IMG/VR virus record: IMGVR_UViG_3300017971_000185
Location: 310,001-374,000 of that record
DNA length: 64,000 nt
Reading direction: 5' to 3' (one strand)
In this document: positions 690-60,067 of the stretch, one piece after another
How positions within the stretch are numbered: position 1 is the stretch's first letter
Layout of the letters: every line of letters begins with the position of its first letter
Made by a program: the position numbers and the translations under genes
The notes under the pieces: model-generated
What the model saw: only the letters and a program-made list of their open reading frames with translations
The model's database searches: none
What the model was told of the DNA's origin: nothing

Positions 690-707
690 GTAGTGCGTCC
701 AGAACGC

Positions 708-781
708 GCGCTGAGAGGGGGTCGAACCCTCGACCTTCCGGGCGAATACCCCGGCTGCTCGGCCTACTGAGCTTCCAGCGC
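708..781 (-). ncRNA. tRNA-like cloverleaf with a non-canonical anticodon loop, in the 5' region of the Pth-like gene
   Basis: Acceptor GCGCTGG/TCAGCGC, D arm GCTC/GAGC, stem CCGGG/CCCGG with loop GTATTCG, T arm GAGGG-TTCGACC-CCCTC. Confidence 0.7.
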
Positions 782-3780: not shown

Positions 3781-3854
3781 GAGGACGTATCGGCCCAGTC
3801 TCCTAAACTGGCAAGCCGTAATGGATGATGGGGGTTCGAGTCCCTCCGTCCTCA
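3781..3854 (+). tRNA. atypical tRNA-Arg(CCT) lacking a normal D arm
   Basis: Acceptor GAGGACG/CGTCCTC, anticodon arm CCAGT-CTCCTAA-ACTGG, T arm GGGGG-TTCGAGT-CCCTC; D region reduced to TATCGGC. Confidence 0.65.
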
Positions 3855-14310: not shown

Positions 14311-14653
14311 TCGGTCGAGAGGATGAGGAGATCGCAGCCGCAAGGCTGAGGAAAGTCCGGGCTCCGTAGAGCAGCGTGCTTGGGAAATCCAAGTCGGGGC
14401 GACCCGCAGGAAAGTGCCGCAGAAAGCAAACCGCCGATGGCCTTCGGGCACAGGCAAGGGTGAAAGGGTGGGGTAAGAGCCCACCGGGTTCCTGGCGACA
14501 GGGATCGCATGGTAAACCCCACGCGGAGCAAGACAAACAGAGAGCGCTGAAGTTGCTCGCCTAGCTCTCGGGTTGTCGCAAAGATGAATGATCGCCACCT
14601 GGCAAGGGCAACCGACCCAGGGACAGAACCCGGCTTACGACCCTCTCGGCCGA
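14311..14653 (+). ncRNA. rnpB: RNase P RNA (bacterial type A)
   Basis: GAGGAAAGTCCGGGCTCC, GGAAAGTGCCGCAGAAA, GGTAAACCCCAC..GGAGCAAG and ACAGAACCCGGCTTA; P1 TCGGTCGAGAGG/CCTCTCGGCCGA. Confidence 0.95.
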
Positions 14654-20181: not shown

Positions 20182-21609
20182 ATGAAGAAGTCTCGTCACC
20201 TCTACCTCCACCCGGAGACCAATCCGGGCAAGATTGCCGCCCTGGAGGCCCTTCACGTCGAGTACGTCAGGTACGTGCGCATCTGCGTGCAGATCATGCT
20301 CGACAACCAGAGGCTCTCCCTCAAACGGTCGGAGAAGCAAGTCTTCTTCCCGAAGGCCGAGAACCTCACCAGCCAGATCCAGAAGAACGCCCGAGACCAC
20401 GCCATCCAAATCGTGAGTACGTGGGCCAAGGCCACCTACGAGCGTGCCGTCAAGAAGCACCTCACCCGAGCACACAGGTTCGGCCAACTTTCCCAGGACG
20501 AACGACACGCCCTCTGCACGGTTGGAAAGCACCTGATCTCAGTGCCTTGGAAGCACGTCACCCAGGAGACCATCGACGCCTACTGGGCACTCCTGCTCGA
20601 CCCAGAGGTCTCTGGTAACCAGCCACGGGTGTCCGAACGCATCCCGATGCGGATGTCGGAGAACACATGCACACTGGCCGACACTGACGAGGCCATCCAC
20701 GCTCCCATGTGGATCAAGATTTCCACGCTGGTCAGCCGGAAAGTCGTCTGGCTTCCGCTCGCAGGGAATCCCTACGTCAAGTCGGCCAACGACGTGTCGA
20801 AGGGAGTCCACGCAAGGAAAGACAAGCGTGGGCGCTGGAGGTTCGAGGTTGTTGAACGCAAGGAGTGGATCGTTCCCGAACTTCAACCCGATGCGCCCAG
20901 GATCGGTGTCGATGTCGGCCTGAACGTCGTGGCCGCCACCTCGGATGGCCGGACGTTCGGAGCAAGTCTCAAACCCAAGTTCGACCGCCTCTACGAGCGC
21001 GTCAGGAACCTTCGTGCGAACCGTCAACGACAGGGTTTCAAGGAGAACAGCCCTCGGCTCAACCGGCTCGAAGACAAACTCACCAGGATGGTAAAGACGA
21101 TCACCGGGGAGGTGGCCAACAGGCTCATCAAGAGCGCACCCGAAGGCACGGTTTTCGTGATCGAAGACTTGGACCTGCGTGGGTGCCGTGGTCAGAAGAG
21201 GTTCGCGTACCGGGCCCTGGCCCACAGCTTGGAGACGAAAGCGCCCACCTTGAAGGTGAATCCGGCGTACACGTCTCAGACTTGCCCTTCCTGTGGTTAC
21301 GTCTCTCGACGTAACCGATCAGGAACCGATTTCGTCTGCCGCTCATGTGGCAGGCGTTCTCATGCCGACGTGGTGGGAGGGATCAACCTGCTGAGACGTT
21401 CTCAGGACGAACAGGTTGACCTCAACGATCACCATCGAGACGTGAGGGAGTTGCTGCGAAAACGATACCGGGCCCGTAGGGCCGGGGACAGTTCCGCAGG
21501 ACTCTGCCGAAAGGCACCCGCGCCTGAACCGTCAGGCCGGAGGCTCACTACCGGAGTATCTCCCCCGAGGAGAGGACGGCACAGCCTCGAATCCGATGCT
21601 TACCTTTGA
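20182..21609 (+). CDS. tnpB: TnpB RNA-guided RuvC nuclease
   Basis: GVDVG, IEDL, PAYTSQTCPSCG, CRSCG..HADVVGGIN; catalytic D/E/D intact. Confidence 0.9.
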   Translation: MKKSRHLYLHPETNPGKIAALEALHVEYVRYVRICVQIMLDNQRLSLKRSEKQVFFPKAENLTSQIQKNARDHAIQIVSTWAKATYERAVKKHLTRAHRFGQLSQDERHALCTVGKHLISVPWKHVTQETIDAYWALLLDPEVSGNQPRVSERIPMRMSENTCTLADTDEAIHAPMWIKISTLVSRKVVWLPLAGNPYVKSANDVSKGVHARKDKRGRWRFEVVERKEWIVPELQPDAPRIGVDVGLNVVAATSDGRTFGASLKPKFDRLYERVRNLRANRQRQGFKENSPRLNRLEDKLTRMVKTITGEVANRLIKSAPEGTVFVIEDLDLRGCRGQKRFAYRALAHSLETKAPTLKVNPAYTSQTCPSCGYVSRRNRSGTDFVCRSCGRRSHADVVGGINLLRRSQDEQVDLNDHHRDVRELLRKRYRARRAGDSSAGLCRKAPAPEPSGRRLTTGVSPPRRGRHSLESDAYL

Positions 21610-23326: not shown

Positions 23327-23446
23327 ATGACACAAATGCGGAACACACTCGGGTTGAGCACCTACCAGTCATTACTGGCGGGGAGGCTCCCCTTGCGTCC
23401 GTATTTGCGCCCGCTGCCGCCACCCCGACTTAGGGGCGCCCTCTAG
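23327..23446 (+). CDS. leader peptide MTQMRNTLGLSTYQSLLAGRLPLRPYLRPLPPPRLRGAL
   Basis: 24 of 39 codons are Leu, Pro, Arg or Tyr, the amino acids of the downstream tRNAs. Confidence 0.75.
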   Translation: MTQMRNTLGLSTYQSLLAGRLPLRPYLRPLPPPRLRGAL

Positions 23447-24610: not shown

Positions 24611-24696
24611 TGGTCGGTATGCAAGAGGTTAAAGCAAGCAGTCTGTAAAACTGCCGCGTTCGCGCTTCGTGGGTTCAAATCCCTCCCGGCCAGCCA
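24611..24696 (+). tRNA. tRNA-Tyr(GTA)
   Basis: Type II cloverleaf, loop CT-GTA-AA; unusual T1-A72 and G73. Confidence 0.88.
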
Positions 24697-24722
24697 GATT
24701 CGGAGTAGAAAGGAGAAGAAAC

Positions 24723-25898
24723 ATGACACAGAAGCAGCACATCAACGTAGGAACCATCGGACACGTGGACCACGGGAAGACCACCCTCACGGCGGCCATC
24801 ACGATGGTCATGGCAGCGATCAACGGAGGCGAGATCAAGACCTTCGATCAGATCGACAAGGCGCCCGAGGAGCGTGAGCGAGGAATCACAATCAACACGG
24901 CGCACGTCGAGTACGAGTCGGAGACTCGCAACTACGCGCACATCGACTGCCCAGGCCACGCCGACTACATCAAGAACATGATCGTCGGTGCGTCCCAGAT
25001 GGACGGCGCGGTACTGCTTGTGGACGCTTCTCAGGGGCCGCAGCACCAGACGCGTGAGCACGTTCTCCTGGCGAAACAGGTGGGCGTCTCGCACATGGTG
25101 GTGTTCATCAACAAGGTGGATATTGCAGATCCCGAGATGCTGGAGCTTGTAGAGATGGAGGTTCAAGATGCTCTTGCCCAGATGGGCTTCGAGGACACTC
25201 CGTTTATTCGGGGCTCCGCGCTCAAGGCACTGGAGGCCGCGAGCGAGGGGAAGATGGACGATCCCGAGATCGAGCCAGTCAAGGCGCTCATCGCCGCGAT
25301 GGACGAGCACCTTCCGGTGCCCAAGCGAGATCGGGAGAGTCCGTTTCTCATGCCCATCGAGAATGTCCACACGATTCCAGGCAGGGGCACGGTCGTGACA
25401 GGTCGTGTGGAGAGGGGCATTCTCACCAAGGGGCAGACGGTGGAGATCGTGGGTCGGACGGACGGGAAGCCCCTGGCTGCGGTCGTCACGGGAATCCAAG
25501 CGTTCCACAAGGACATCCCCGAGGCGGCGGCGGGTCTCAACATCGGCATGCTCCTACGTGGCATCGATCGGGATGAAGTCCTGCGTGGTCAGGTAGCAGT
25601 TGCTCCTGGCTCCTTGCTTCCTCACGAGAAAGGCAAGGCCGAGATCTTCACACTCACAGCCAAGGAGGGTGGTCGTCACACTTCGTTCTCTGGCGGATAC
25701 AGGCCACAATTCTACTTTGGCGCCACTGACGTGACTGCGGCAGTCGTGCCGGAGGATGGGAAAGTCGTCGAGCCTGGCGATCGGGCCACGGTGGACTTTG
25801 AGCTAGTGAGTCCGGTTGCTTGCGAGCCCGGCATGAGGTTCGCCATCCGCGAGGGTGGCAAGACCGTAGGTGCTGGGATGGTCACGGAGGTAGTCTAA
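24723..25898 (+). CDS. tuf: elongation factor Tu
   Basis: [50 protein letters not shown]; SD AAGGAG. Confidence 0.97.
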
Positions 25899-26012: not shown

Positions 26013-26093
26013 CTAAAGGGGTAATGGAGGCAGATGACCAAAACATGCCAAACGTGTAAATTTTGGAAGCATTCGATGGTGAAGAGAAAAAGC

Positions 26094-26163
26094 AAGCAAA
26101 GGACCCTGTACTTCTCCATTGGTTCTCAAAGCAAAGGACCCTGTACTTCTCCATTGGTTCTCA
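26094..26163 (+). repeat. 35-nt tandem duplication inside a degenerate small ORF
   Basis: AAGCAAAGGACCCTGTACTTCTCCATTGGTTCTCA x2. Confidence 0.85.
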
Positions 26164-26281
26164 GAGGGTACGGGCACGCCGAACCTCCCGAGAGAGGGCT
26201 TCTCGTGGAAAATGACGAAGAGTGGGGGCATCCTCACGGGGCCTTACTTCGGCTGTGTCAACCACGAAGAGTGATTATCGA

Positions 26282-32482: not shown

Positions 32483-32578
32483 ATGACGAAACGCACCACA
32501 ACAACAGCTATGCTCAGTGCCCGAGTGGCCCTGCATGGCTTTGTACGTCCAAATATGGACGATACGACCCCGTGTTGA
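32483..32578 (+). CDS. leader peptide MTKRTTTTAMLSARVALHGFVRPNMDDTTPC
   Basis: 7 Thr codons (ACG, ACC, ACA) plus GAC/GAT and GTA/GTG. Confidence 0.75.
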   Translation: MTKRTTTTAMLSARVALHGFVRPNMDDTTPC

Positions 32579-33094: not shown

Positions 33095-33220
33095 ATGCCT
33101 GACGATGATGACGATGACGATGATCGCTTGCCCGCGTTGGTGAAGTCTGGTCTATCACGCTTGGTTGTCAGCCAAGAGGTCATGGGTTCAAATCCCATAC
33201 GCGGGGCTGGAGGTCCGTAA
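33095..33220 (+). CDS. leader peptide MPDDDDDDDDRL..., reading through tRNA-Asp
   Basis: SD AAGGAGG; 8 consecutive GAC/GAT codons ending 6 nt before tRNA-Asp. Confidence 0.8.
   Translation: MPDDDDDDDDRLPALVKSGLSRLVVSQEVMGSNPIRGAGGP
33131..33206 (+). tRNA. tRNA-Asp(GTC)
   Basis: Cloverleaf, loop TT-GTC-AG, G73. Confidence 0.9.
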
Positions 33221-33325: not shown

Positions 33326-33865
33326 ATGAACGGAGAAGCATTTGCATTTTCCGACGAATCGCGCAAAGCTCAGTTTGGCGCGACTAAAGTCTGTTCTAGG
33401 TGTCGTAGGGAGCTTCCTGTTGCCGACTTTTCGTATGCGAGCCGTGTAAAGCTCTATGCCTGGTGTCGCGACTGCGCACGGACTTATCAGCGGGAAGTCT
33501 ATCGGACGTTTGAGGGGCAGATGAAGCATCGGGTTCGTGCGGCGCGAGGAAGGGCTCAGCGATTTGGTTTAGATTTCGATCTTGCCGTTCAGGATCTTCT
33601 TGAGTTGTGGGACGAACAGGACGGGAAGTGTGCAATTTCAGGATTGCCCATGGTCATCGATAGCGAAGAGGAGAAAGGGAAGCAAGCGTTTCGTCCGTCC
33701 GTTGACCGCATCGTTCCGAAACGCGGATACGTTCGGGGGAACATTCGGCTGGTGACGACTATCGTAAACTTCGGGATCAACAAGTGGGGTCTCGATCCGT
33801 TTCTTGCCATGTGCGAAGGTGTTGTTCAAACCATAGGCGAAAGGAAGGCATACCATGACTGTTGA
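33326..33865 (+). CDS. HNH-like endonuclease
   Basis: CSRC..CRDC; GKCAISG..PSVDRI....GY..GNIRLV..VN. Confidence 0.75.
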   Translation: MNGEAFAFSDESRKAQFGATKVCSRCRRELPVADFSYASRVKLYAWCRDCARTYQREVYRTFEGQMKHRVRAARGRAQRFGLDFDLAVQDLLELWDEQDGKCAISGLPMVIDSEEEKGKQAFRPSVDRIVPKRGYVRGNIRLVTTIVNFGINKWGLDPFLAMCEGVVQTIGERKAYHDC

Positions 33866-35747
33866 AAACCTGGGGCCTGCTGAAAAGATCATCCAAGCTC
33901 TTTTGACGCACACGGACCATCTCTACCACAACCGACCGGGAATCGTGGTTGCCGACCGGCGTACCACGACTGGCGTGCGGTGGGATCCTGTCACGTGGAA
34001 GGCAGGCGAGAACGGTGAGCGTACCGTCTACCGTTTGGTGAAGGCGGGACGTAAGCAGCGTCGTGTCGAGATCGGCACGATGAACGGCGAGAACCGCAAG
34101 ATCATGAAGGACGGAGCCGAGGTAGGCGAGTACCGTCCGAGCGGCTTGTACCCCGAAGTCGCCATTTGGTTCTACAAGCAAGTTGCCGAAGTGTGGAAGC
34201 TGGACAACGAGTTTGCCGCACGTTGGGCATCGTTCGCGTTCCGTCAGGACCACCGCGATCTCAAGGTCGTTCTGGCCGCCTTCCTCTTGGTCCAGTCGCG
34301 TAAGGGCGATCCCGTCATGGACGGCATGGTCCGTCTGTTCGCGGATGAGGACTACAGGGACGTGGGCGAGGCGATGATCTTGCTCCAAGAGAAGGGCAAG
34401 GATCTCAACCCGAAGCTGTTGCTCCGCATCTGGGAGGTTCTCTCGTTGCCGGAGATCGCGGCTGTCAACCGCGAGCTTGGTTTCGGCAAGTCGGCAAAGC
34501 GTCCATTCCTGGGTCGTTGGAGCAGGGCGGTCGAGAAGTGGCTCCGCTACCGTGAAGAGAACCCGAAGATGCTGGAGGGTCTCGTCAAGGCCGGATTCAG
34601 AACCACGGTGATGACGCTTGCCCGGAAGATCGGCTACAAGCCCACGACTGATCGGTTCTTCGAAGTCCTGCGCTGGAAGCAGAAGCAGGCCGAAGATGGC
34701 CGTCGTGAGATGGCGATTGGCAAGGAAGTCAAGGCGGCCGAGTCTTGGGCGGATCTCGATGAAATGTCGATCTGCGAGATCATCGAGAAGACCAAGCCGA
34801 ATTGGAAGCGGATCGTTGGTTTGCTTCCTTCCGAGGTTGGCGTGACCCGTGCAATCATGGCTGCGGCCATCGAGGCAGGCTCTCTGTCGGACAAGGACAT
34901 CATCATCCTGACGCCGACGTTGGAGGAGCTTGGGCTGCTCAAGGTCCAAGAGATCAAGGAACGTCTCGACTCGGCCCTGGCTCGGGCGAACGACATGCGT
35001 GCGGCCAACATCGCTCGCAACGTCCGTGACAAGGAGACCAAGGAGACGCTGGAGGCGGGTGCCGACAAGGCCGCTCAGAAGGTGGTCGAGGAAGTCGCAC
35101 GCGACATCACCATCGACTTCATCGTTGACATTTCGGCTTCGATGGAAGGCGCCCTGGATGCGGCCAAGCCGCTCATCGCCAAGTTTCTCCAGGCCCTTCC
35201 GGCTGATTACGTCAATGTTGCCGTGTTCAACACGGCAGGCCGTGAGGTCAAGGTCAAGCACAACTCGACCAAGGGCGTCGAGGCCGCTTTCCGCGGCATC
35301 AAGGCCGGAGGAGGCACTGACTACGGTGCGGGTGTGCGGGCAGTCCAGAAGCACGCGACCCCGGAAGGCCACGATCGCATCATGGTCTTCATTGGGGATG
35401 AGGAAGCACGGCCGTTCGATGAGGCTGTGAGGGTGTCGGGTCTCAACCCGGTTGCCTTCGGATTCCTCAAGACGGTTCCCTTCGGAGGAGCCGCAGCGTG
35501 GCGTTATCGGCACTACGGGCCGGACGGCAACATCGCAGTGCGGGAGACGGCTGCTCGTCTCAACATCCCATGCTTCATGATCGATGACCGCACTTTCGAG
35601 GACCCCTACGCAATCACTCGCACTCTCCAGGCTTTGATTGCGGCGACTCCGGTTGGGGAAGTGACTCAGGCTCGTCCGCGTCCGCGCGTGACGCTCGTTG
35701 ATCAGATTCTCAACACTGAGTTGCTTGCTAAGCCCGCATGGGCATGA
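33855..35747 (+). CDS. Ro60/TROVE-like protein with a C-terminal vWA domain
   Basis: Long helical N-terminal region, then MIDAS motifs VDISASM, GGTD and IGDE; TROVE assignment inferred from architecture and context. Confidence 0.65.
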   Translation: MTVENLGPAEKIIQALLTHTDHLYHNRPGIVVADRRTTTGVRWDPVTWKAGENGERTVYRLVKAGRKQRRVEIGTMNGENRKIMKDGAEVGEYRPSGLYPEVAIWFYKQVAEVWKLDNEFAARWASFAFRQDHRDLKVVLAAFLLVQSRKGDPVMDGMVRLFADEDYRDVGEAMILLQEKGKDLNPKLLLRIWEVLSLPEIAAVNRELGFGKSAKRPFLGRWSRAVEKWLRYREENPKMLEGLVKAGFRTTVMTLARKIGYKPTTDRFFEVLRWKQKQAEDGRREMAIGKEVKAAESWADLDEMSICEIIEKTKPNWKRIVGLLPSEVGVTRAIMAAAIEAGSLSDKDIIILTPTLEELGLLKVQEIKERLDSALARANDMRAANIARNVRDKETKETLEAGADKAAQKVVEEVARDITIDFIVDISASMEGALDAAKPLIAKFLQALPADYVNVAVFNTAGREVKVKHNSTKGVEAAFRGIKAGGGTDYGAGVRAVQKHATPEGHDRIMVFIGDEEARPFDEAVRVSGLNPVAFGFLKTVPFGGAAAWRYRHYGPDGNIAVRETAARLNIPCFMIDDRTFEDPYAITRTLQALIAATPVGEVTQARPRPRVTLVDQILNTELLAKPAWA

Positions 35748-38845: not shown

Positions 38846-38973
38846 GCCGGACATGACCCGTGGGGGTCACCCGATTTTCCATCGGTAACGATCCGACAGC
38901 ACCACTCGCCCCTCAAGAGGGGCTCACGGATGATGTCCACAAGCACTGCCAGGTTCGACTCCTGGGTCCGGCG
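38846..38973 (+). ncRNA. tRNA mimic type A1 (open acceptor, module inserted in the variable loop)
   Basis: GCCGGAC/GTCCGGC; D, anticodon and T arms; GACA..CACTC-hairpin-..TGTC-CACAAGC insert. Confidence 0.75.
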
Positions 38974-38974
38974 C

Positions 38975-39104
38975 TGAAGCAACCAACCAGACAGGGCTCA
39001 CACGCAAAGTAGCTCATTGGGTAGAGCATCGGTATCGCAAACCGAGGGTAGCTGGTTCAAGTCCAGTCCTTGCAACAAACAAGCTCTTCAACTCGGTTGC
39101 TTCA
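38975..39104 (+). ncRNA. Y-like RNA type B1 (whole tRNA mimic nested inside the module)
   Basis: Outer stem TGAAGCAACC/GGTTGCTTCA; loop ATCGCAA. Confidence 0.75.
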
Positions 39105-39144: not shown

Positions 39145-39272
39145 GGCGGACCAGGCCCGGTGGGGGCCAACCGACTTACACTCGGCAACGATCCGACACC
39201 AACACTCGCCTCTTTCGAGGCTCCTCGGTTGAATGTCCACAAGCTAGCCTGGTTCGATTCCAGGGTCCGCCT
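39145..39272 (+). ncRNA. tRNA mimic type A2
   Basis: Paralog of A1 with compensatory changes (GGCGGAC/GTCCGCC; CCTGG/CCAGG). Confidence 0.75.
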
Positions 39273-39274
39273 CT

Positions 39275-39404
39275 GAAGCGACCAAACCCGAAAGGGCTCA
39301 CAAGCAAAGAAGCTCATTTGGCTGAGCGTCTCGATCATAACGAGAAGGTAGCTGGTTCAACTCCAGTCCTTGCACTCTGTTCAGCCCCTCAACTCGGTCG
39401 CTTC
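39275..39404 (+). ncRNA. Y-like RNA type B2
   Basis: Paralog of B1; GAAGCGACC/GGTCGCTTC; loop ATCATAA. Confidence 0.75.
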
Positions 39405-39765: not shown

Positions 39766-39769
39766 GTTT

Positions 39770-39853
39770 TTCTCCCCGAGCGACGGCGCTTTCGCCAACT
39801 CCGTCAGGACCGGAAGGTAGCAGCGGTAACGGAGGACCGGGTGCTCGGGGGAA
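39770..39853 (+). ncRNA. ffs: small SRP RNA (4.5S-like)
   Basis: Helix-8 motif GTCAGGACCGGAAGGTAGCAGC inside a hairpin closed by CCCCGAGC/GCTCGGGG. Confidence 0.85.
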
Positions 39854-39905
39854 CGTTTCACCGAGCCGGGGTCGTCGGTGGGCGCTTATCGCCGCGGAGA
39901 GGCGT

Positions 39906-40087: not shown

Positions 40088-40156
40088 ATGGACGACGACA
40101 TTAGCGACATTATCCGACATGGGTTCGTAGCTCAGTTGGTTAGAGCGCTGCCCTGA
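40088..40156 (+). CDS. leader peptide MDDDISDIIRHGFVAQLVRALP, reading into tRNA-Ile
   Basis: ATT..ATT ATC ending 6 nt before tRNA-Ile(GAT); stop lies in the anticodon loop. Confidence 0.6.
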   Translation: MDDDISDIIRHGFVAQLVRALP

Positions 40157-40194: not shown

Positions 40195-40342
40195 CAGATT
40201 TCCGCAGCCAACAACTGCGGGCCAACACGACCGATAGCGGAAGGAATCCAGCAGCGCAGGGGACGACGATTGATATGTAGAATCGGGCCCTGTTTGACAA
40301 TCTCCGCCGAACCAAGTGCTTGGAACAGAAAGTCCCCTATGA

Positions 40343-40419
<77 letters not shown>

Positions 40420-40737: not shown

Positions 40738-41114
<377 letters not shown>

Positions 41115-43647: not shown

Positions 43648-43680
43648 ATGTCCGGTATCCGTCTGAAACGCAAGACCTAG
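43648..43680 (+). CDS. leader peptide MSGIRLKRKT (probably leaderless mRNA)
   Basis: Contains both AAA and AAG; pairs with the 5' end of tRNA-Lys. Confidence 0.65.
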   Translation: MSGIRLKRKT

Positions 43681-45780: not shown

Positions 45781-47468
45781 CATGAAACGTCGAACGTGTC
45801 CCAAGTGTTTGTCTGGCTGGATCACGGTCCGATACGAGAAGACCCACATCCGTGAACGTCTCCGGTACACCTGCACGAGTTGCGGATATACGTGGACGGG
45901 GCCGTGCGCGGACGAGCGTGACTCGATCTGGCCGCCTCCATCTGGTCCGTGGCAGCCTTCCGGGCCATGGCGACCAAGGCCCAAGCGTCGGGTGGTTCGG
46001 ACGAAAGCCGCTCCCGAGATACCCTGTCCTGACTGTGGGTGTACAGGAGCGCACTTCTGTACAGGCAAGCCGTTGCCCGAGGAGACCATCTACGTGCTAG
46101 AGAGGTAGCATGAGAATCAAGGTCGATCTGAAAGTGCAAATAGACGACGGTCCCGTGAAGGAGTCCACTCTTCGCATGGGGGACAGGGACTACCCTGCGG
46201 AGCAGATTGCTCCTCTCACGGTCGCCGCCGTTACCTACACGATCAACCAACTCCTCGACCAAGATGTCCTGGTTGTGGGACGCGAGCCTTCTTTCGAGGA
46301 GCTTCGCAACGTGTTGCACAGCAGTCTGCATCCGTCATCTGAGGAAATGCGCAAGATTCGGAAGGCCGTGGAGGAGAGCCATGCCACAGATCGCAATCGG
46401 TGATCCAGACCCGCCCGAGACGCCAGGATCAGGGAAAACGTACATTCCGTACTACCCGTATCCCTTCGTTCCGTTCCCGTACATTCCATTCGTGCCCGAT
46501 CCGTATCCGTGGACGCCAGTGCCGAGGGAGAACAGGTGCCCCAGATGCGGGATCAAGTGGGAGGGAGTCATGGGCTATGTTTGCGGAGATCCCAACTGCC
46601 CCATGCAGCCGCGCATCACGTGGTGAAACGGGGTAGACTCCCCACATGCTCGATCGGAAAGAGCTACAGCACTGGCTCAGCGCGAGTATGACCTTCTACG
46701 CCGGGGCCTCCTGCGCAGCGTTTGCGTTCGGGGAACACTTTGAGGGGTTCGTGGGAGTCGCCCTGATCTTGGTGACCTTCGTGGTGTTGGTGACGATGAA
46801 AGGTTCCGACAAAGATGCCGACAAGGACGTTCAACGGTAACGAGATCGAGTGGCTCATGCAGTCGGATCGCGTCGTCCAGACGACGCCCGTGGAGGGGCT
46901 GGAGGGCGGTTACCAGATGAAGGAAGTGGTCGTGGATCATCCAGATGGAAAGCTCTATCGGTTCACGTACTACTACGACACCGAGCACGGCATGACCATG
47001 AGCAGCGAAGAACCTGACGGGAAATTCGAGGCTATCGAAGTCAAGGCTGTTCCTATCACGACGTATCGCTACGAGCCGGTGTAGGCATGTCACAGGATCG
47101 GTTTGTTACCTTCGACAAGCGCAAGCCGACGCGCGATGAGGTCGAGTCTGTGCTTCGCAACTACTTCGATGAAGCTGCGGACATCAAATGGGCCGACGAT
47201 CGCTGGATTGCTACTCTCCCCGGCAAGTGGAGTTTTCCGTTTGTCGAGATCGTTGGGTATTCGCCCCGACCGCGGGAGATAGCGGAGCGTTGGATCGAGG
47301 TCTATGTCGGGAAGCGGTCTAAGGTAGGAAACCTGGACGTGATCACGCGCCAGCAGGATGAATACACCAACGTTCTCGCTGACGGGCTGGCGCGGATGTT
47401 TGCTCGGTATTGGGAAGGCAAGCTGGACGACGGGTCCTAGACACTCCGGCGGCGGCTGAAGAAAGGGC

Positions 47469-47497
47469 TTGACGGGCCGCCTAACGTCCGCTACAAG
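47469..47497 (+). promoter_or_regulatory. sigma70-like promoter of the tRNA-Glu/Asn operon
   Basis: TTGACG-N17-TACAAG; same GCTACAAGG..GTCATG layout as the Lys operon. Confidence 0.7.
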
Positions 47498-47506
47498 GGT
47501 GTTGTC

Positions 47507-47593
47507 ATGTTGAGTCGTCTGAATACCAGCCCGCGCAGGCCCGCTCTCGTTGAACGAGAGCGCGAGGCTGAAGTACGCCTGCGCGGGGAGTAA
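47507..47593 (+). CDS. leader peptide MLSRLNTSPRRPALVEREREAEVRLRGE
   Basis: 5 Glu codons (GAA and GAG) in the 3' half. Confidence 0.75.
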   Translation: MLSRLNTSPRRPALVEREREAEVRLRGE

Positions 47594-47645
47594 CACAGAC
47601 GGTTCCAGACAACAGAGACCGCTGCCCCGCGCAGGAGCTTCACGC

Positions 47646-47718
47646 GCGGGCATCTTCCAAATGGTCAGGATCTCGGCCTTTCAAGCCGAAGATACGGGTT
47701 CAAGCCCCGTTGTCCGCA
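47646..47718 (+). tRNA. tRNA-Glu(TTC)
   Basis: Cloverleaf, loop CT-TTC-AA. Confidence 0.88.
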
Positions 47719-47721
47719 CCT

Positions 47722-47794
47722 GTCCCTGTCGTCTAGTGGCCTAGGATTCTGGAACCTCACTCCAGAGACGCCGGTTCAAATCCGGCCAGGGGCG
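47722..47794 (+). tRNA. tRNA-Glu(CTC)
   Basis: Cloverleaf, loop AC-CTC-AC. Confidence 0.85.
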
Positions 47795-48446
47795 CAGCAT
47801 CCAACATTCCCATGATCTCGTACCAGAGGTCTGCATTGCGAGTCCCAATGGTTAGAGTGCCGTGGTAATCCTGTCTTCGAATCCGACGTTTGCTTGAACT
47901 AGGAAGAACAACCCACGTCCGCTCGTTTTTCAACCTCGAAAGGTTTAGACGGCGTTTCCACCAACGAAGGTGTTTCTCAACATCGTAACCCGGAGCGATA
48001 CACAGTCGGATTGTGAGATCCTGATTCCGCAACCCGAAGCCTCGGAGCCATTTCAGGAAAACTTCGTGTATTCGGGGGTCCATGTTAGACATTGAGAGAT
48101 CGCCAGGTTCTCTCTTGGACCCTTCACCCCAATACAACCCCAGCCCCAACATTAGGAGGTCACGTCCCGTTCCATTTCCAAGGCGATCGGCACCCATTCG
48201 TCGCTGTTTTGTGCGAAGGGCTTTGCGAAGCGCCTGACGTTTCTTGTTCGACCGTCGAAGCGCACGGCTCTGAGGAGCGCGCGCATTGTTGTCGATTTGA
48301 TCGCGTTGCTCCGGCGTAAGTTCGATGTCGTGGCACCAGCGGTGGACGCTGCCGGGCGAAACTCCTAAAGCCTTCGCAATCTGTTTCATGGATCCCCCAC
48401 GTAGCCGCATTTGCCGAGCCTTTTCATGTTCTTCTGGCTTTGCCAT
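47757..48446 (-). CDS. HTH plus LAGLIDADG-like protein, antisense within the tRNA operon
   Basis: SMKQIAKALGVSPGSVHRW; LGLGLYWGEGSK..SNMDP. Confidence 0.65.
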   Translation of the reverse strand: MAKPEEHEKARQMRLRGGSMKQIAKALGVSPGSVHRWCHDIELTPEQRDQIDNNARAPQSRALRRSNKKRQALRKALRTKQRRMGADRLGNGTGRDLLMLGLGLYWGEGSKREPGDLSMSNMDPRIHEVFLKWLRGFGLRNQDLTIRLCIAPGYDVEKHLRWWKRRLNLSRLKNERTWVVLPSSSKRRIRRQDYHGTLTIGTRNADLWYEIMGMLDAAPLAGFEPASLE

Positions 48447-48705: not shown

Positions 48706-49506
48706 ATGGGCAGCAAAAGCTCACTTGGGGACCGCATGAAGCGATACGAGCAAGTGCCGCGCACATCGCTCACGCCCCGGACTCCCATGATTATCCGCAT
48801 CGATGGGCGGGCGTTTCACACGTACACGAAGAACATGCAGAAGCCGTGGGACCCGGTTCTGCGGGATGCTCTCACGGCCGCTGCACAGGAGCTTCTGCGC
48901 GAGATTGCTGGAGCGAAGCTGGCTTACCTCCAGTCGGACGAGATCTCTGTGCTCGTGACCGACTACGACAAGCTCACGTCGCAAGCGTGGTTCGACAAGG
49001 TGGCCCAGAAGATCTGCTCCGTGTCGGCGTCTATCACCACAGCCGTCTTCAACCGCGGCGTACTGGAGACTTTCCTTGGGCGCTACGATGTTCGCGAGTT
49101 GAAGGGGGCTGACGGCAGTCTCGACACAGCGATGCTTCCTCCTCCGGCACATTTCGACAGCCGATGTTTCGTGGTCCCGCGTGAGGATGTCACCAACTAC
49201 TTCGTGTGGCGCCAGCAGGACAGCACGCGAAACTCCGTCTCGGCTCTCGCGCAATCGCACTTCTCACATGAGGAGCTACAAGGCAAGAAGTGGGGTCAGA
49301 TGCAGGAGCTACTGTTCCAGGAGAAGGAGATCAACTGGAACGACTGCGAGACCTGGCAGAAGCGTGGTTGGTGTGTCTTGCGGAGCACTGTGGAGATCGA
49401 ACCGGGCAAGATGCGAGTGATCGTTGAGCCGGACCTGGAGGTCCCTGTTTTCTCCAACTATCGCGCGTACATCGAGAAGTATCTTCATTTGGACACGGAC
49501 GCCTAG
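48706..49506 (+). CDS. thg1: tRNA(His) guanylyltransferase Thg1-like protein
   Basis: IIRIDGRAFHTYT, YLQSDEIS, FDSR, YFVWRQQD..RNS. Confidence 0.92.
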   Translation: MGSKSSLGDRMKRYEQVPRTSLTPRTPMIIRIDGRAFHTYTKNMQKPWDPVLRDALTAAAQELLREIAGAKLAYLQSDEISVLVTDYDKLTSQAWFDKVAQKICSVSASITTAVFNRGVLETFLGRYDVRELKGADGSLDTAMLPPPAHFDSRCFVVPREDVTNYFVWRQQDSTRNSVSALAQSHFSHEELQGKKWGQMQELLFQEKEINWNDCETWQKRGWCVLRSTVEIEPGKMRVIVEPDLEVPVFSNYRAYIEKYLHLDTDA

Positions 49507-56927: not shown

Positions 56928-57080
56928 ATGTTTACCCCAGTCCAAACCATCGTTGAGAACGCACGCTACGCAGCACCCGCCATTGCGGCTGCCGCCGCGG
57001 GATCGTGTGCCTCCGATTGGTCAGGACTCGGTACACGGCCCAGTAGTGGTGCTCTGTCCAGGCAGAGACGCTCCGTTTAG
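56928..57080 (+). CDS. leader peptide MFTPVQTIVENARYAAPAIAAAAAGSCASDWSGLGTRPSSGALSRQRRSV
   Basis: SD GAGGT; 11 Ala, 7 Ser, 4 Gly, plus TGT, TGG and AGG/AGA. Confidence 0.75.
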   Translation: MFTPVQTIVENARYAAPAIAAAAAGSCASDWSGLGTRPSSGALSRQRRSV

Positions 57081-58100: not shown

Positions 58101-58172
58101 GCGTGTGTAGCTCAGTTGGCAGAGCATCAGCTTCCATGCTGAGGGTCGCGGGTTCGATCCCCGCCACATGCT
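58101..58172 (+). tRNA. tRNA-Gly-type body with a 6-nt anticodon loop (probably a defective Gly(CCC))
   Basis: TCAGC-TTCCAT-GCTGA. Confidence 0.65.
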
Positions 58173-58191
58173 CGAAAGGAAGAACATGAAC

Positions 58192-58559: not shown

Positions 58560-58934
58560 ATGGCACAGATCACCAAAGAACAGGTCATTGACTATCTGGG
58601 GGCCCTCTCGCCTTCGGAAATGGCTATCCTCATCGAGAACCTGGAAGAGACGTGGGGCATGGAGATGTCCCGGCCAACTCAGCAAGCACCGAAGGTCGAG
58701 CAAGAGAAGGAGGAAGAACAGACGGAATTCGAGGTCATACTTGAGAGTTTCGGAGACAAGAAGATCGACGTGATCAAGACCGTTCGCCAGGAGAAGCCGG
58801 GGATGGGTCTCAAGGAAGCAAAGGAGTTTGTCGAGTCTGCGCCGGTTACGATCGGTGAGGCGCTCTCAAAGGAGGAAGCAGAGGAAGCCAAGGCCAAGCT
58901 GGAGGAGGCAGGCGCAACGATCACGATCAAGTAA
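58560..58934 (+). CDS. rplL: 50S ribosomal protein L7/L12
   Basis: EEQTEFEVIL..GDKKIDVIK.VR...GLKEAKEFVESAP..SKEEAE..KAKLEEAGA. Confidence 0.95.
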   Translation: MAQITKEQVIDYLGALSPSEMAILIENLEETWGMEMSRPTQQAPKVEQEKEEEQTEFEVILESFGDKKIDVIKTVRQEKPGMGLKEAKEFVESAPVTIGEALSKEEAEEAKAKLEEAGATITIK

Positions 58935-59013: not shown

Positions 59014-59072
59014 AGGGACGTAGCTCAATGGAAGAGTGCCGGAAGCTGCGGGTTCGAATCCCGTCGTCTCCA
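59014..59072 (+). ncRNA. anticodon-arm-less tRNA-Ala-like RNA
   Basis: Acceptor with G3:U70 and A73; D and T arms present; only GCCGGAAGCT between them. Confidence 0.65.
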
Positions 59073-60034: not shown

Positions 60035-60067
60035 ATGGAACACGAACGATGGCGAGGCTGTCCGTAA
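60035..60067 (+). CDS. leader peptide MEHERWRGCP
   Basis: SD AAGGAGG; TGG and TGT codons; stop lies in the loop of a GCTGTCC/GGACAGC hairpin, just before tRNA-Trp and tRNA-Cys. Confidence 0.7.
   Translation: MEHERWRGCP

What the first reader, a model, noticed from the sequence alone, without database searches (positions are those of the whole stretch)
47469..47794. Glu leader has a textbook four-segment attenuator whose off state hides the tRNA acceptor strand
Segment 1 CCCGCGCAGGC (47530-47540) pairs with segment 2 GCCTGCGCGGGG (47577-47588). Segment 2 can instead pair with segment 3 CCCCGCGCAGG (47625-47635). Segment 3 can instead pair with segment 4 GCGCGGG (47644-47650), which includes the 5' end of tRNA-Glu(TTC). 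Four Glu codons (GAA, GAG, GAG, GAA) lie between segments 1 and 2, and the stop lies just after segment 2. A ribosome stalled on Glu would favour 2:3 and free the tRNA. A ribosome reaching the stop would cover segment 2 and favour 3:4. This is trp/his attenuator logic with tRNA folding as the output (inference).
Basis: partly seen in the sequence, partly recalled or inferred. Interest (0 to 1): 0.85.

Follow-up and report, generated by a model that had tools for sequence, protein, structure and literature searches.

The report
Glutamate-sensing leader before phage tRNA-Glu
A roughly 500-kb phage places a short, highly conserved, glutamate-codon-rich reading frame with switchable RNA hairpins in front of its own tRNA-Glu gene, which suggests the phage makes this tRNA only when ribosomes run short of it, a control not found described for tRNA genes.

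Summary
All four segments, the Glu codons, the stop and the tRNA start lie at the stated coordinates. The 10-mer CCCGCGCAGG occurs exactly three times in 64 kb, all within this leader.

The unit has a TTGACG-N17-TACAAG promoter and a near-leaderless 28-codon ORF with five Glu codons, not four. tRNA-Glu(UUC) and tRNA-Glu(CUC) follow.

A diverged relative (L014) keeps the ORF at 96.6% identity with no indels. The tRNAs are only 76-81% identical and the flanking gene about 41%.

Folding only the RNA 3' of a ribosome gives a sharp switch in both phages:
- Ribosome at Glu codons 16-20: helix 2:3 forms and the acceptor stem forms (p 0.92-0.98).
- Ribosome at the stop: helix 3:4 forms and the acceptor stem is hidden (p 0.00-0.09).
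- None of 400 shuffled leaders reproduces the full pattern.

Cognate-codon-rich leader ORFs also precede other tRNA clusters here (p about 7e-4) and in 48 related phage loci (p about 0.0015).

"Textbook" overstates it. There is no terminator U-tract. Extra pairings exist (1:4, and segment 0 with the 2-3 loop). Acceptor hiding is not general among the other leaders. Nothing is experimentally tested.

Verdict: a probable Glu-sensing attenuator of a new kind; the output step is inferred.

The parts
47469..47497 (+). Sigma-70-like promoter: TTGACG (-35, 47469-74), 17-nt spacer, TACAAG (-10, 47492-97)
   Evidence: Regex scan. The same TTGAC-N17-GCTACAAGG architecture precedes the Lys leader. In L014 both hexamers are conserved while the spacer varies. 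Homology to the X19 contig begins at 47457.
47507..47593 (+). 28-codon leader ORF, MLSRLNTSPRRPALVEREREAEVRLRGE*. The ATG lies 9 nt after the -10 hexamer, so the mRNA is leaderless or nearly so.
   Evidence: It is 96.6% identical with no indels in L014. Variant contigs show only 47510 T>C and 47515 T>C (both synonymous), 47529 G>A and 47537 A>G.
47512..47521 (+). Segment 0, GAGTCGTCTG. It pairs with 47596-47605 in the 1:2 state.
   Evidence: Constrained folds. The change 47515 T>C in L014, X12 and X19 turns a U.G pair into C-G.
47530..47540 (+). Segment 1, CCCGCGCAGGC. It pairs with segment 2 or, as 47529-36, with segment 4.
   Evidence: The change A47537G in L014, X13 and X19 keeps the pair with segment 2 as G.U.
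47542..47562 (+). Perfect 10-bp inner hairpin, CGCTCTCGTT/AACGAGAGCG
   Evidence: I7. Invariant in L014.
47552..47572 (+). Four Glu codons within seven codons: GAA 47552, GAG 47558, GAG 47564, GAA 47570. A fifth GAG lies at 47588-90.
   Evidence: All are conserved in L014.
47577..47588 (+). Segment 2, GCCTGCGCGGGG. It pairs with segment 1 or segment 3.
   Evidence: I5: 11/11 bp with segment 3
47596..47624 (+). Loop between segments 2 and 3. CAGACGGT (47596-603) pairs either with segment 0 or with ACCGCTG (47618-24). Contains AGAGAC (47614-19).
   Evidence: This is the least conserved part of the leader (71% identity, 1-2 nt indels).
47625..47635 (+). Segment 3, CCCCGCGCAGG. It pairs with segment 2 or segment 4.
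   Evidence: Invariant in L014 and X19.
47644..47651 (+). Segment 4, GCGCGGG(C): two leader nucleotides plus tRNA nucleotides 1-5(6), the 5' acceptor strand
   Evidence: (I13). L014 and X19 have ACGCGGG, giving only 6 bp.
47646..47720 (+). tRNA-Glu(UUC)
   Evidence: ARAGORN; Rfam 58.3 bits
47722..47795 (+). tRNA-Glu(CUC), one nucleotide after the first tRNA
   Evidence: ARAGORN; Rfam 48.6 bits

Best explanation
This is a self-contained promoter-leader-tRNA unit of a roughly 500-kb phage.

The transcript starts a few nucleotides before an AUG. Ribosomes translate a 28-codon leader that carries four Glu codons in seven positions.

OFF state (inferred): when charged tRNA-Glu is plentiful, the ribosome runs to the stop and covers segment 2. 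If no ribosome is present, 1:2 forms first. In either case segment 3 stays free and pairs with segment 4, which is the first nucleotides of tRNA-Glu(UUC). The acceptor stem then cannot form, and the precursor is a poor RNase P substrate.

ON state (inferred): when charged tRNA-Glu is scarce, the lead ribosome stalls at Glu16-20. It holds segment 1 in or behind the ribosome and leaves segment 2 free. Segment 2 captures segment 3 in a long hairpin, and the tRNA 5' strand is free to fold and mature.

The result is a demand-driven negative feedback on the phage's own tRNA supply.

Shown: the anatomy, the conservation, the codon statistics and the predicted folds. Inferred: translation of the leader, stalling, and tRNA maturation as the output.
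For: - Coordinates, repeats and complementarity are confirmed.
- The promoter is shared with the Lys unit, and similar promoter-like sites precede the Pro, Thr and Arg/Ser units. Five of seven TTGAC-type sites in 64 kb lie less than 260 nt upstream of a tRNA cluster.
- The leader ORF is the most conserved part of the locus between the window and L014: ORF 96.6%, tRNAs 76-81%, upstream gene 41%. It has no indels, and indels start just after the stop.
- Ribosome-position folding gives acceptor-stem probability 0.97 for stalls at Glu16/18/20 and 0.00 at the stop in the window. In L014 the values are 0.92-0.98 and 0.08-0.09.
- The full pattern appears in 0 of 400 shuffled leaders.
- The alternative states lie within about 7 kcal/mol of each other.
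- Cognate-codon leaders occur before other tRNA clusters: MPDDDDDDDD before tRNA-Asp, MTKRTTTT before Thr..PHHH.. before His, MEHERWRGCP before Trp-Cys.
- Permutation tests give p about 7e-4 in the window and 29 of 20000 across 461 tRNA-cluster heads in 48 related phage loci.
- In relatives, Asp, Ile and Lys leaders follow good Shine-Dalgarno sites; the His and Thr leader ORFs are conserved as well.
- The Lys leader ORF is kept with a GTG start and an in-frame length change in L035.
- The Arg/Ser leader is kept with an in-frame codon indel in L013.
Against: - No RNA or ribosome data are available; no RNA run was listed.
- Equilibrium folding that allows pairing across the ribosome never frees the acceptor strand, because segment 1 pairs with segment 4.
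- The fourth and fifth Glu codons would favour the OFF fold if the stall occurred there.
- A predicted hidden acceptor in naked RNA is common for tRNAs in this window, so it carries little weight.
- The other leaders show no significant complementarity to their tRNA 5' strands, so the output may differ or acceptor hiding may be particular to Glu.
- The 3:4 loop grows from 11 to 16 to 19 nt, and the stem drops from 7 to 6 bp, in relatives.
- Only one full-length diverged homologue exists, and it shows no compensatory double changes.
- The ORF lacks a Shine-Dalgarno site.
- Conservation of third codon positions shows an RNA-level constraint that does not by itself require translation.
- Glu tRNAs of more distant relatives lack Glu-rich leaders.
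Confidence: 0.5

Rival explanations
1. The sensor is the same (a translated Glu-rich leader with a 1:2 / 2:3 switch), but the output is different. Candidates are premature transcription termination, either Rho-dependent on the A/C-rich stretch 47589-47624 or by a non-canonical hairpin, or control of transcript cleavage and stability. In this reading the pairing of segment 3 with the tRNA 5' end is incidental.
For: - Segments 1-3 and the ORF are far better conserved than the spacer between segment 3 and the tRNA.
- Other leaders in the genome show no significant acceptor complementarity.
- The stretch after the stop is A/C-rich and poorly structured when 2:3 is open.
- A transcriptional output would regulate both Glu tRNAs, whereas acceptor masking touches only the first.
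Against: - No U-tract follows 3:4, and no terminator-like site was called on the + strand here.
- The acceptor complementarity is the strongest of 42 tRNAs.
- The predicted ON/OFF effect on the acceptor stem recurs in L014 and in 0 of 400 shuffles.
Confidence: 0.2
2. The leader is an untranslated structured 5' leader, for example a processing or stability element such as an RNase III/E target, or a folding chaperone for the precursor. The ORF and its Glu codons are by-products of the hairpin sequences.
For: - Conservation is near-total at all three codon positions.
- The fold is strong (z -3.8).
- There is no Shine-Dalgarno sequence.
- The Glu codons GAA-CGA-GAG lie inside the perfect inner hairpin, so they are partly dictated by structure.
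Against: - The ATG is fixed 9 nt after the -10 hexamer in the Glu, L014-Glu and Lys units, and a GTG lies at a near-identical distance (8 nt) in the L035 Lys unit.
- The ORF has no indels, while indels begin directly after the stop.
- Two of the four ORF substitutions are synonymous.
- Cognate-codon enrichment of leaders genome-wide and clade-wide is not explained by structure.
- The minus-strand ORF over the region is broken by indels in relatives.
Confidence: 0.15
3. The ORF encodes a small functional peptide unrelated to tRNA control, or the arrangement is a chance by-product of local duplication with no function.
For: - The Glu leader is restricted to one lineage.
- It looks derived from the Lys-type leader by duplication.
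- On the ORF alone, the Glu enrichment is modest: 5 of 28 codons, -log10 p 1.38.
Against: - Conservation exceeds that of the adjacent tRNAs.
- The 10-mer occurs three times in switch geometry.
- The switch pattern is absent from 400 shuffles.
- The same theme recurs for at least seven other amino acids.
Confidence: 0.07

Closest known systems
Ribosome-mediated transcription attenuators of amino-acid operons (trpL, hisL, leuL, thrL, pheL) and of pheST
   Same: A short leader ORF is enriched in codons for the sensed amino acid. Helices 1:2, 2:3 and 3:4 are mutually exclusive. A ribosome stalled at the regulatory codons selects 2:3.
   Different: Helix 3:4 is not an intrinsic terminator, because it has no U-tract. 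The controlled gene is a tRNA and not a biosynthetic or synthetase mRNA. Segment 4 is part of the product RNA itself. Segments 1 and 3 are identical, so a 1:4 pairing also exists. The start is near-leaderless.
Translational attenuation of ermC / cat leaders
   Same: The output is the unmasking of a functional site in segment 4 by RNA refolding after a ribosome stalls in the leader, not transcription termination. The ground state is 1:2 + 3:4 and the induced state is 2:3.
   Different: In ermC and cat the stall is drug- and nascent-peptide-dependent, and segment 4 holds a ribosome-binding site. Here the stall would be caused by a shortage of charged tRNA, and segment 4 is a tRNA acceptor strand.
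T-box riboswitches
   Same: A cis-acting leader reports the supply of a specific charged tRNA and controls a translation-related gene.
   Different: The T-box binds uncharged tRNA directly, has no leader peptide, and has conserved specifier and T-box motifs. No Rfam T-box match was found here.
tRNA gene arrays of huge and jumbo phages
   Same: A large tRNA complement is carried together with translation factors. The window holds 44 tRNAs, EF-Tu, an L7/L12 homologue, RNase P RNA and SRP RNA.
   Different: No report of codon-specific leader peptides in front of phage tRNA genes was found in the searchable library.

Membership tests
trp/his-type ribosome-mediated transcription attenuator | Short leader ORF enriched in codons of the sensed amino acid | tested here: met
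   5 Glu in 28 codons, 4 of them within 7 codons. Glu ranks first of 20 amino acids in the upstream region. All Glu codons are conserved in L014.
trp/his-type ribosome-mediated transcription attenuator | Mutually exclusive helices 1:2, 2:3 and 3:4 | tested here: met
   State energies are -96.7, -90.5, -89.5 and -87.3 kcal/mol.
trp/his-type ribosome-mediated transcription attenuator | 3:4 is an intrinsic terminator (GC hairpin followed by a U-tract) | tested here: not met
   3:4 is followed by CATCTTCCAAATGG. No + strand terminator-like site was called there.
trp/his-type ribosome-mediated transcription attenuator | The leader is translated and stalling changes the outcome | not testable with these tools
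   No RNA or Ribo-seq run was listed. Only in-silico ribosome footprints are available.
ermC-type translational attenuation | A stalled ribosome frees segment 2, 2:3 forms, and segment 4 is unmasked | tested here: met
   Met in silico only. One search shows it in both the window and L014. It is absent from 400 shuffles.
ermC-type translational attenuation | Segment 4 contains the ribosome-binding site of a downstream ORF | tested here: not met
   Segment 4 is nucleotides 1-5 of tRNA-Glu(UUC).
T-box riboswitch | Match to the T-box covariance model (specifier loop and T-box sequence) | tested here: not met
   No T-box hit at the gathering threshold or at E<=10 on 47440-47800.

The most novel reading that the evidence does not exclude
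A clade of huge phages regulates its own tRNA supply amino acid by amino acid. Individual tRNA transcription units carry leader peptides rich in the cognate codons. Glu, Lys, Thr, Pro/Arg, Arg/Ser and Trp/Cys leaders stop before the tRNA. Asp, His, Ile and Met leaders read into the tRNA. Ribosome stalling, which signals that the charged tRNA is scarce (for example after host tRNA depletion or cleavage), would permit folding and maturation of exactly that tRNA. The Glu unit is the most elaborate case, with the tRNA acceptor strand as the fourth segment of the switch.
Probability: 0.4. Interest if true: 0.9.

Novelty: new variant of a known kind. Interest (0 to 1): 0.8.

Why it matters
Leader-peptide attenuation is the classic way bacteria read charged-tRNA levels. 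It is known for amino-acid biosynthesis operons and a few synthetase genes, not for tRNA genes, and not with tRNA folding as the output.

If real, this would show four things:
- Phage tRNA arrays are regulated on demand and are not expressed constitutively.
- A tRNA can autoregulate through the ribosome that consumes it.
- RNA refolding can gate RNase P substrates.
- Huge phages monitor the host translation state codon by codon, which bears on the arms race around host tRNA-targeting defences.

It also gives a compact, portable sensor design for synthetic biology. The hypothesis is directly testable with a roughly 300-nt construct.

Tried and rejected
Searches for close DNA relatives:
- Annotated phages and plasmids gave only generic tRNA hits.

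Scans of IMG/VR for Glu-leader homologues:
- Patterns used were promoter plus leader start, segment 2 plus stop, the inner hairpin, tRNA-Glu(UUC) and tRNA-Glu(CUC).
- Only the same phage (two identical contigs) and chance hits (L004, L005, L019-L022) were found.

Metagenome scans:
- The leader-peptide alignment as query gave 600 pattern hits, none confirmed.
- The promoter/start pattern gave only the same phage plus chance hits L023-L025.

Neighbouring-protein route:
- The 117-aa protein gave P0003/L008, which has no tRNA, and L012, which is too short.
- Thg1 homologues gave L014, the only full Glu-leader homologue, and L013. Other Thg1 loci (L015-L018, L028-L030) have no nearby tRNAs.
- The 416-aa protein found only the same phage.
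- Walking from the L035 Lys unit (L087) showed no Glu tRNA downstream.

Glu tRNAs of more distant clade members:
- None has a Glu-rich leader.

RNA-seq:
- No RNA run was listed. Only DNA contigs could be laid.

Known RNA families:
- Rfam gave no family for the leader.

Ideas rejected:
- The minus-strand ORF 47491-47643 as a gene: 1-2 nt indels in relatives break it.
- Equilibrium folding with footprints as a sufficient model: it allows helices spanning the ribosome and never frees the tRNA.
- A hidden acceptor in naked RNA as evidence: it is unspecific.

Full report
**1. Context**

The window is 58% G+C. It carries 44 ARAGORN tRNAs plus two further Rfam-only tRNA hits (46 Rfam matches in all), a bacterial class-A RNase P RNA (14315-14653) and an SRP RNA (39767-39859). 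It also encodes EF-Tu, an L7/L12 homologue, Thg1, a pyruvoyl arginine decarboxylase, spermidine synthase and a TnpB-like protein.

It is identical to part of IMG/VR contig UViG_3300017971_000185 (497 kb). It also matches 372-528 kb contigs from other sediment and seawater samples. It is therefore a huge phage. No near relative exists among annotated phages or plasmids.

**2. The observation**

Every coordinate in the finding is correct:
- Segment 1: CCCGCGCAGGC, 47530-40.
- Segment 2: GCCTGCGCGGGG, 47577-88.
- Segment 3: CCCCGCGCAGG, 47625-35.
- Segment 4: GCGCGGG, 47644-50.
- tRNA-Glu(TTC) starts at 47646 and tRNA-Glu(CTC) at 47722.

The only + strand ATG ORF in the leader is 47507-47593, MLSRLNTSPRRPALVEREREAEVRLRGE*. 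It has Glu codons at 47552, 47558, 47564 and 47570. A fifth, unreported one lies at 47588, directly before the TAA.

The exact 10-mer CCCGCGCAGG occurs three times in the 64-kb window on both strands, all here: twice direct and once inverted. Segments 2 and 3 pair over 11 of 11 positions.

- A perfect 10-bp hairpin at 47542-62.
- An 8-bp pairing of 47529-36 with 47644-51 (1:4).
- A second pair of alternatives. CAGACGGT(TC) at 47596-605 pairs with GAGTCGTCTG (47512-21) when 1:2 forms. It pairs with ACCGCTG (47618-24) when 2:3 forms.

The region folds better than all 200 shuffles (z -3.8).

**3. The transcription unit**

TTGACG-N17-TACAAG (47469-97) is one of only seven TTGAC-type promoter-like sites in the window. 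Five of the seven lie less than 260 nt upstream of tRNA clusters: Pro 23278, Thr 32406, Lys 43610, Glu 47469 and Arg/Ser 56884.

The Glu and Lys units share GCTACAAGG-N5-GTCATG and an in-frame CGTCTGAA. This suggests a common origin. It also suggests a start codon 9 nt after the -10 hexamer, giving a leaderless or nearly leaderless mRNA.

**4. Comparative evidence for the Glu leader**

One full-length diverged homologue was found, L014 (JGI 3300009509). Its Thg1 is 75% identical in protein sequence. Its gene order is leader, Glu(UUC), Glu(CUC), Asn, Thg1.

Identity to the window, region by region:

| Region | Identity |
|---|---|
| End of upstream gene | 41% |
| Spacer | 31% |
| Promoter | 90% (both hexamers kept, spacer varied) |
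| Leader ORF | 96.6%, no indels |
| Loop between segments 2 and 3 | 71%, with indels |
| Segment 3 to junction | 83% |
| tRNA-Glu(UUC) | 76% |
| tRNA-Glu(CUC) | 81% |

The ORF is thus better conserved than the tRNAs it precedes.

Contigs from four further metagenomes were laid on the region. They show the same few variable sites:
- 47501 G>C.
- 47510 T>C, synonymous (Leu).
- 47515 T>C, synonymous (Ser). It turns a U.G pair into C-G in the helix between segment 0 and the loop.
- 47529 G>A (S>N).
- 47537 A>G (R>G). It turns A-U into G.U in helix 1:2.
- 1-nt indels that start at 47592, within the stop codon, past the last sense codon.

Homology begins at 47457, just 5' of the -35 hexamer.

The junction varies. 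It is CTTCACGC|GCGGGC in the window, CTTCACCATAC|GCGGGC in L014 and ACTTCAGTCCATAC|GCGGGC in X19. As a result 3:4 drops from 7 to 6 bp and its loop grows from 11 to 16 to 19 nt.

No compensatory double substitution was seen. The support comes from conservation, not covariation.

Glu tRNAs of more distant clade members carry no Glu-rich leader. The Glu leader is therefore lineage-restricted.

**5. Folding**

State energies for the naked transcript 47504-47721:

| State | Energy (kcal/mol) |
|---|---|
| 2:3 + 1:4 | -96.7 |
| 1:2 + 3:4 | -90.5 |
| 2:3 + cloverleaf | -89.5 |
| 1:2 + cloverleaf | -87.3 |

In L014 the minimum-energy fold is 1:2 + 3:4. Both phages therefore hide the tRNA 5' strand in the predicted ground state. 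This alone is weak evidence: about half of all tRNAs in the window lose their acceptor stem in silico when 142 nt of upstream RNA are added.

When footprints are only made unpaired, the tRNA is never freed. The model then lets segment 1 pair across the ribosome with segment 2 or segment 4.

When only the RNA 3' of the ribosome may fold, which is the physically and kinetically more realistic case, the result is a sharp switch in both phages:
- A-site at Glu16, Glu18 or Glu20: 2:3 probability about 0.8-1.0, 3:4 probability 0, acceptor stem 0.97 (L014: 0.92-0.98).
- Glu22: intermediate.
- Glu28 or the stop: 2:3 probability 0, 3:4 probability 1.00 (L014: 0.75-0.76), acceptor stem 0.00 (L014: 0.08-0.09).

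Among 400 dinucleotide shuffles of the leader, 50 were ON at all three stall sites. 99 were OFF at the stop, 2 showed both, and none showed the full pattern including OFF when naked.

Complementarity of the upstream 150 nt to the tRNA 5' strand is the strongest of 42 tRNAs (p 0.007). It is not significant for the other leader-bearing tRNAs.

The same state calculation gives a switch-like pattern for the paralogous Lys unit: 0.89 at K7, and 0.06-0.07 at K9 and the stop. Results are partial for Trp/Cys and Arg/Ser, and there is no ON state for Thr.

**6. The wider pattern**

Upstream of other tRNA clusters the window has ATG ORFs rich in the cognate codons:
- Asp: MPDDDDDDDDRL, behind AAAGGAGGA, reading into tRNA-Asp (33095).
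- Thr: MTKRTTTTA...DDTTPC* (32483-32578).
- His: MLTTAHTDDEPHHHTY, reading into tRNA-His (40738).
- Ile: MDDDISDIIRH (40088).
- Lys: MSGIRLKRKT* (43648-43680).
- Pro-Arg-Pro-Pro: ...RLPLRPYLRPLPPPRLR... (23327-23446).
- Arg-Ser-Ser-Ser: ...SSGALSRQRRSV* (56928-57080).
- Trp-Cys: MEHERWRGCP* (60035-60067).

Label-permutation tests gave p = 0.013 frame-agnostic. The ORF-based test gave 69 of 100000.

A conserved VWA protein (33855-35747) gave access to 52 related huge-phage loci. On 461 non-redundant tRNA-cluster heads from 48 of these loci the same test gave z = 3.2, 29 of 20000.

Recognisable leader families recur in these relatives:
- Asp: MADDDDDDR, MNIENDDCDDVDDTY, MDSDDSDDRDLY and MDAPDDCDDR, all behind GAAAGGAGG-like sites and reading into tRNA-Asp.
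- Thr: MKRSTTTSATTAAL... and MKHSTTYTATTTTT...
- His: ...GGDHHHLM.
- Ile: ...DISDII.
- Lys: MKRKNKPGKAGPKR, and GTG-TVRLKRKT* in L035.

The Arg/Ser leader of L013 keeps its frame through a codon indel and a moved stop.

This makes a translated, codon-sensing role for the Glu ORF the most economical reading.

**7. Mechanism and confidence**

*Shown:* the anatomy, the non-randomness, the conservation profile and the statistical association of leaders with cognate tRNAs.

*Inferred:* translation of the ORF, stalling at Glu16-20 when charged tRNA-Glu is scarce, and maturation of tRNA-Glu(UUC) as the regulated step.

The kinetic order fits the model:
- Without a stalled ribosome, 1:2 forms first, or the terminating ribosome covers segment 2. 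Segment 3 is then free when segment 4 emerges, about 70 nt before the 3' acceptor strand exists.
- With a stall, segment 2 is free and takes segment 3.

Approximate probabilities:
- A Glu-sensing translated switch of some kind: about 0.7.
- Acceptor-strand masking as its output: about 0.5.
- The same sensor with a transcriptional or stability output: about 0.2.
- An untranslated structural leader: about 0.15.

**8. Comparison with known systems**

The sensor works like trp/his/pheST attenuators. It fails the defining terminator test. In output it is closer to ermC-type translational attenuation, which unmasks a site in segment 4. It is not a T-box.

Five full-text searches found no report of leader peptides in front of tRNA genes, in phages or elsewhere. 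That library is incomplete, so this is absence of evidence only.

**9. Verdict**

The finding is a new variant of ribosome-mediated attenuation, of high interest, and testable with a 300-nt construct.

Noticed in passing
window 33095-33131; 32483-32578; 40738-40787; 40088-40121; 43648-43680; 23327-23446; 56928-57080; 60035-60067; 40339-40343: Other tRNA clusters are preceded by short ORFs rich in the cognate codons. These are Asp (8 Asp in a row behind AAAGGAGGA, reading into the tRNA), Thr, His, Ile, Lys, Pro/Arg, Arg/Ser and Trp/Cys, plus ATGATG just before a tRNA-Met. The association is significant by permutation here and in 48 related phage loci.
   Followed up: partly
window 14315-14653, 39767-39859, 24669-25898, 58560-58934, 48706-49506: The phage encodes its own RNase P RNA, SRP RNA, EF-Tu, ribosomal protein L7/L12 homologue and a Thg1-family tRNA-His guanylyltransferase, next to 44 or more tRNAs.
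   Followed up: partly
window 38880-39003 and 39180-39303: Two similar elements of about 120 nt (AACGATCCGACA..CACTCGCC.., with a T-arm-like GGTTCGAYTCC) lie directly upstream of the calls tRNA-Ala(cgc) 39003 and tRNA-Met 39303. Both of these calls fold poorly on their own (acceptor probability about 0.4). They may be tRNA-like or split-tmRNA-like pieces. ARAGORN called no tmRNA in the window, but the relatives L013, L056, L063, L065, L068 and L071 have one.
   Followed up: no
window 47757-48446 (-): A minus-strand ORF of 229 aa (210 aa as called on the identical contig) has only sub-threshold N-terminal helix-turn-helix matches. Its stop lies inside tRNA-Glu(CTC). The whole stretch between tRNA-Glu(CTC) and tRNA-Asn is absent from L014, where Asn follows Glu directly. 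It looks like an inserted mobile gene.
   Followed up: partly
window 4319, 23470, 32606, 47614, 57064: The hexamer AGAGAC occurs 22 times on the + strand. Five copies lie 18-51 nt upstream of the first tRNA of a cluster (Val/Arg, Pro, Thr, Glu, Arg/Ser), against about 0.6 expected. It is lost in the L014 Glu leader. It may be a processing or recognition signal.
   Followed up: partly
window 26090-26165: Two tandem copies of a unit of about 37 nt (AGCAAAGGACCCTGTACTTCTCCATTGGTTCTCA) lie upstream of tRNA-Leu(caa).
   Followed up: no
window 58101-58173 and 706-781 (-): One tRNA call has an anomalous 2-nt anticodon ('cc'). There is also a tRNA-Asn(att) on the minus strand. Rfam adds tRNA-like hits at 3781-3854 and 59014-59072 that ARAGORN does not call.
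   Followed up: no
window 47646-47720 vs L014 666-740: tRNA-Glu(UUC) has an acceptor stem GCGGGC, which from general knowledge is atypical for bacterial tRNA-Glu (GUCCCC type, as in the neighbouring CUC isoacceptor). Its D-arm differs strongly between the two phages. The acceptor 5' strand resembles segment 2, which would fit co-evolution with the leader.
   Followed up: no
L087 11776-12457: In the related phage downstream of its Lys unit, a release-factor homologue (PCRF/RF-1 domains) is called as two adjacent ORFs of 37 and 168 aa. This could be a programmed frameshift as in prfB, or a broken gene.
   Followed up: no
window 20182-21609; L015 19795-20898: TnpB/Cas12f-like (OrfB_IS605) genes are present in this phage and in a related one.
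   Followed up: no
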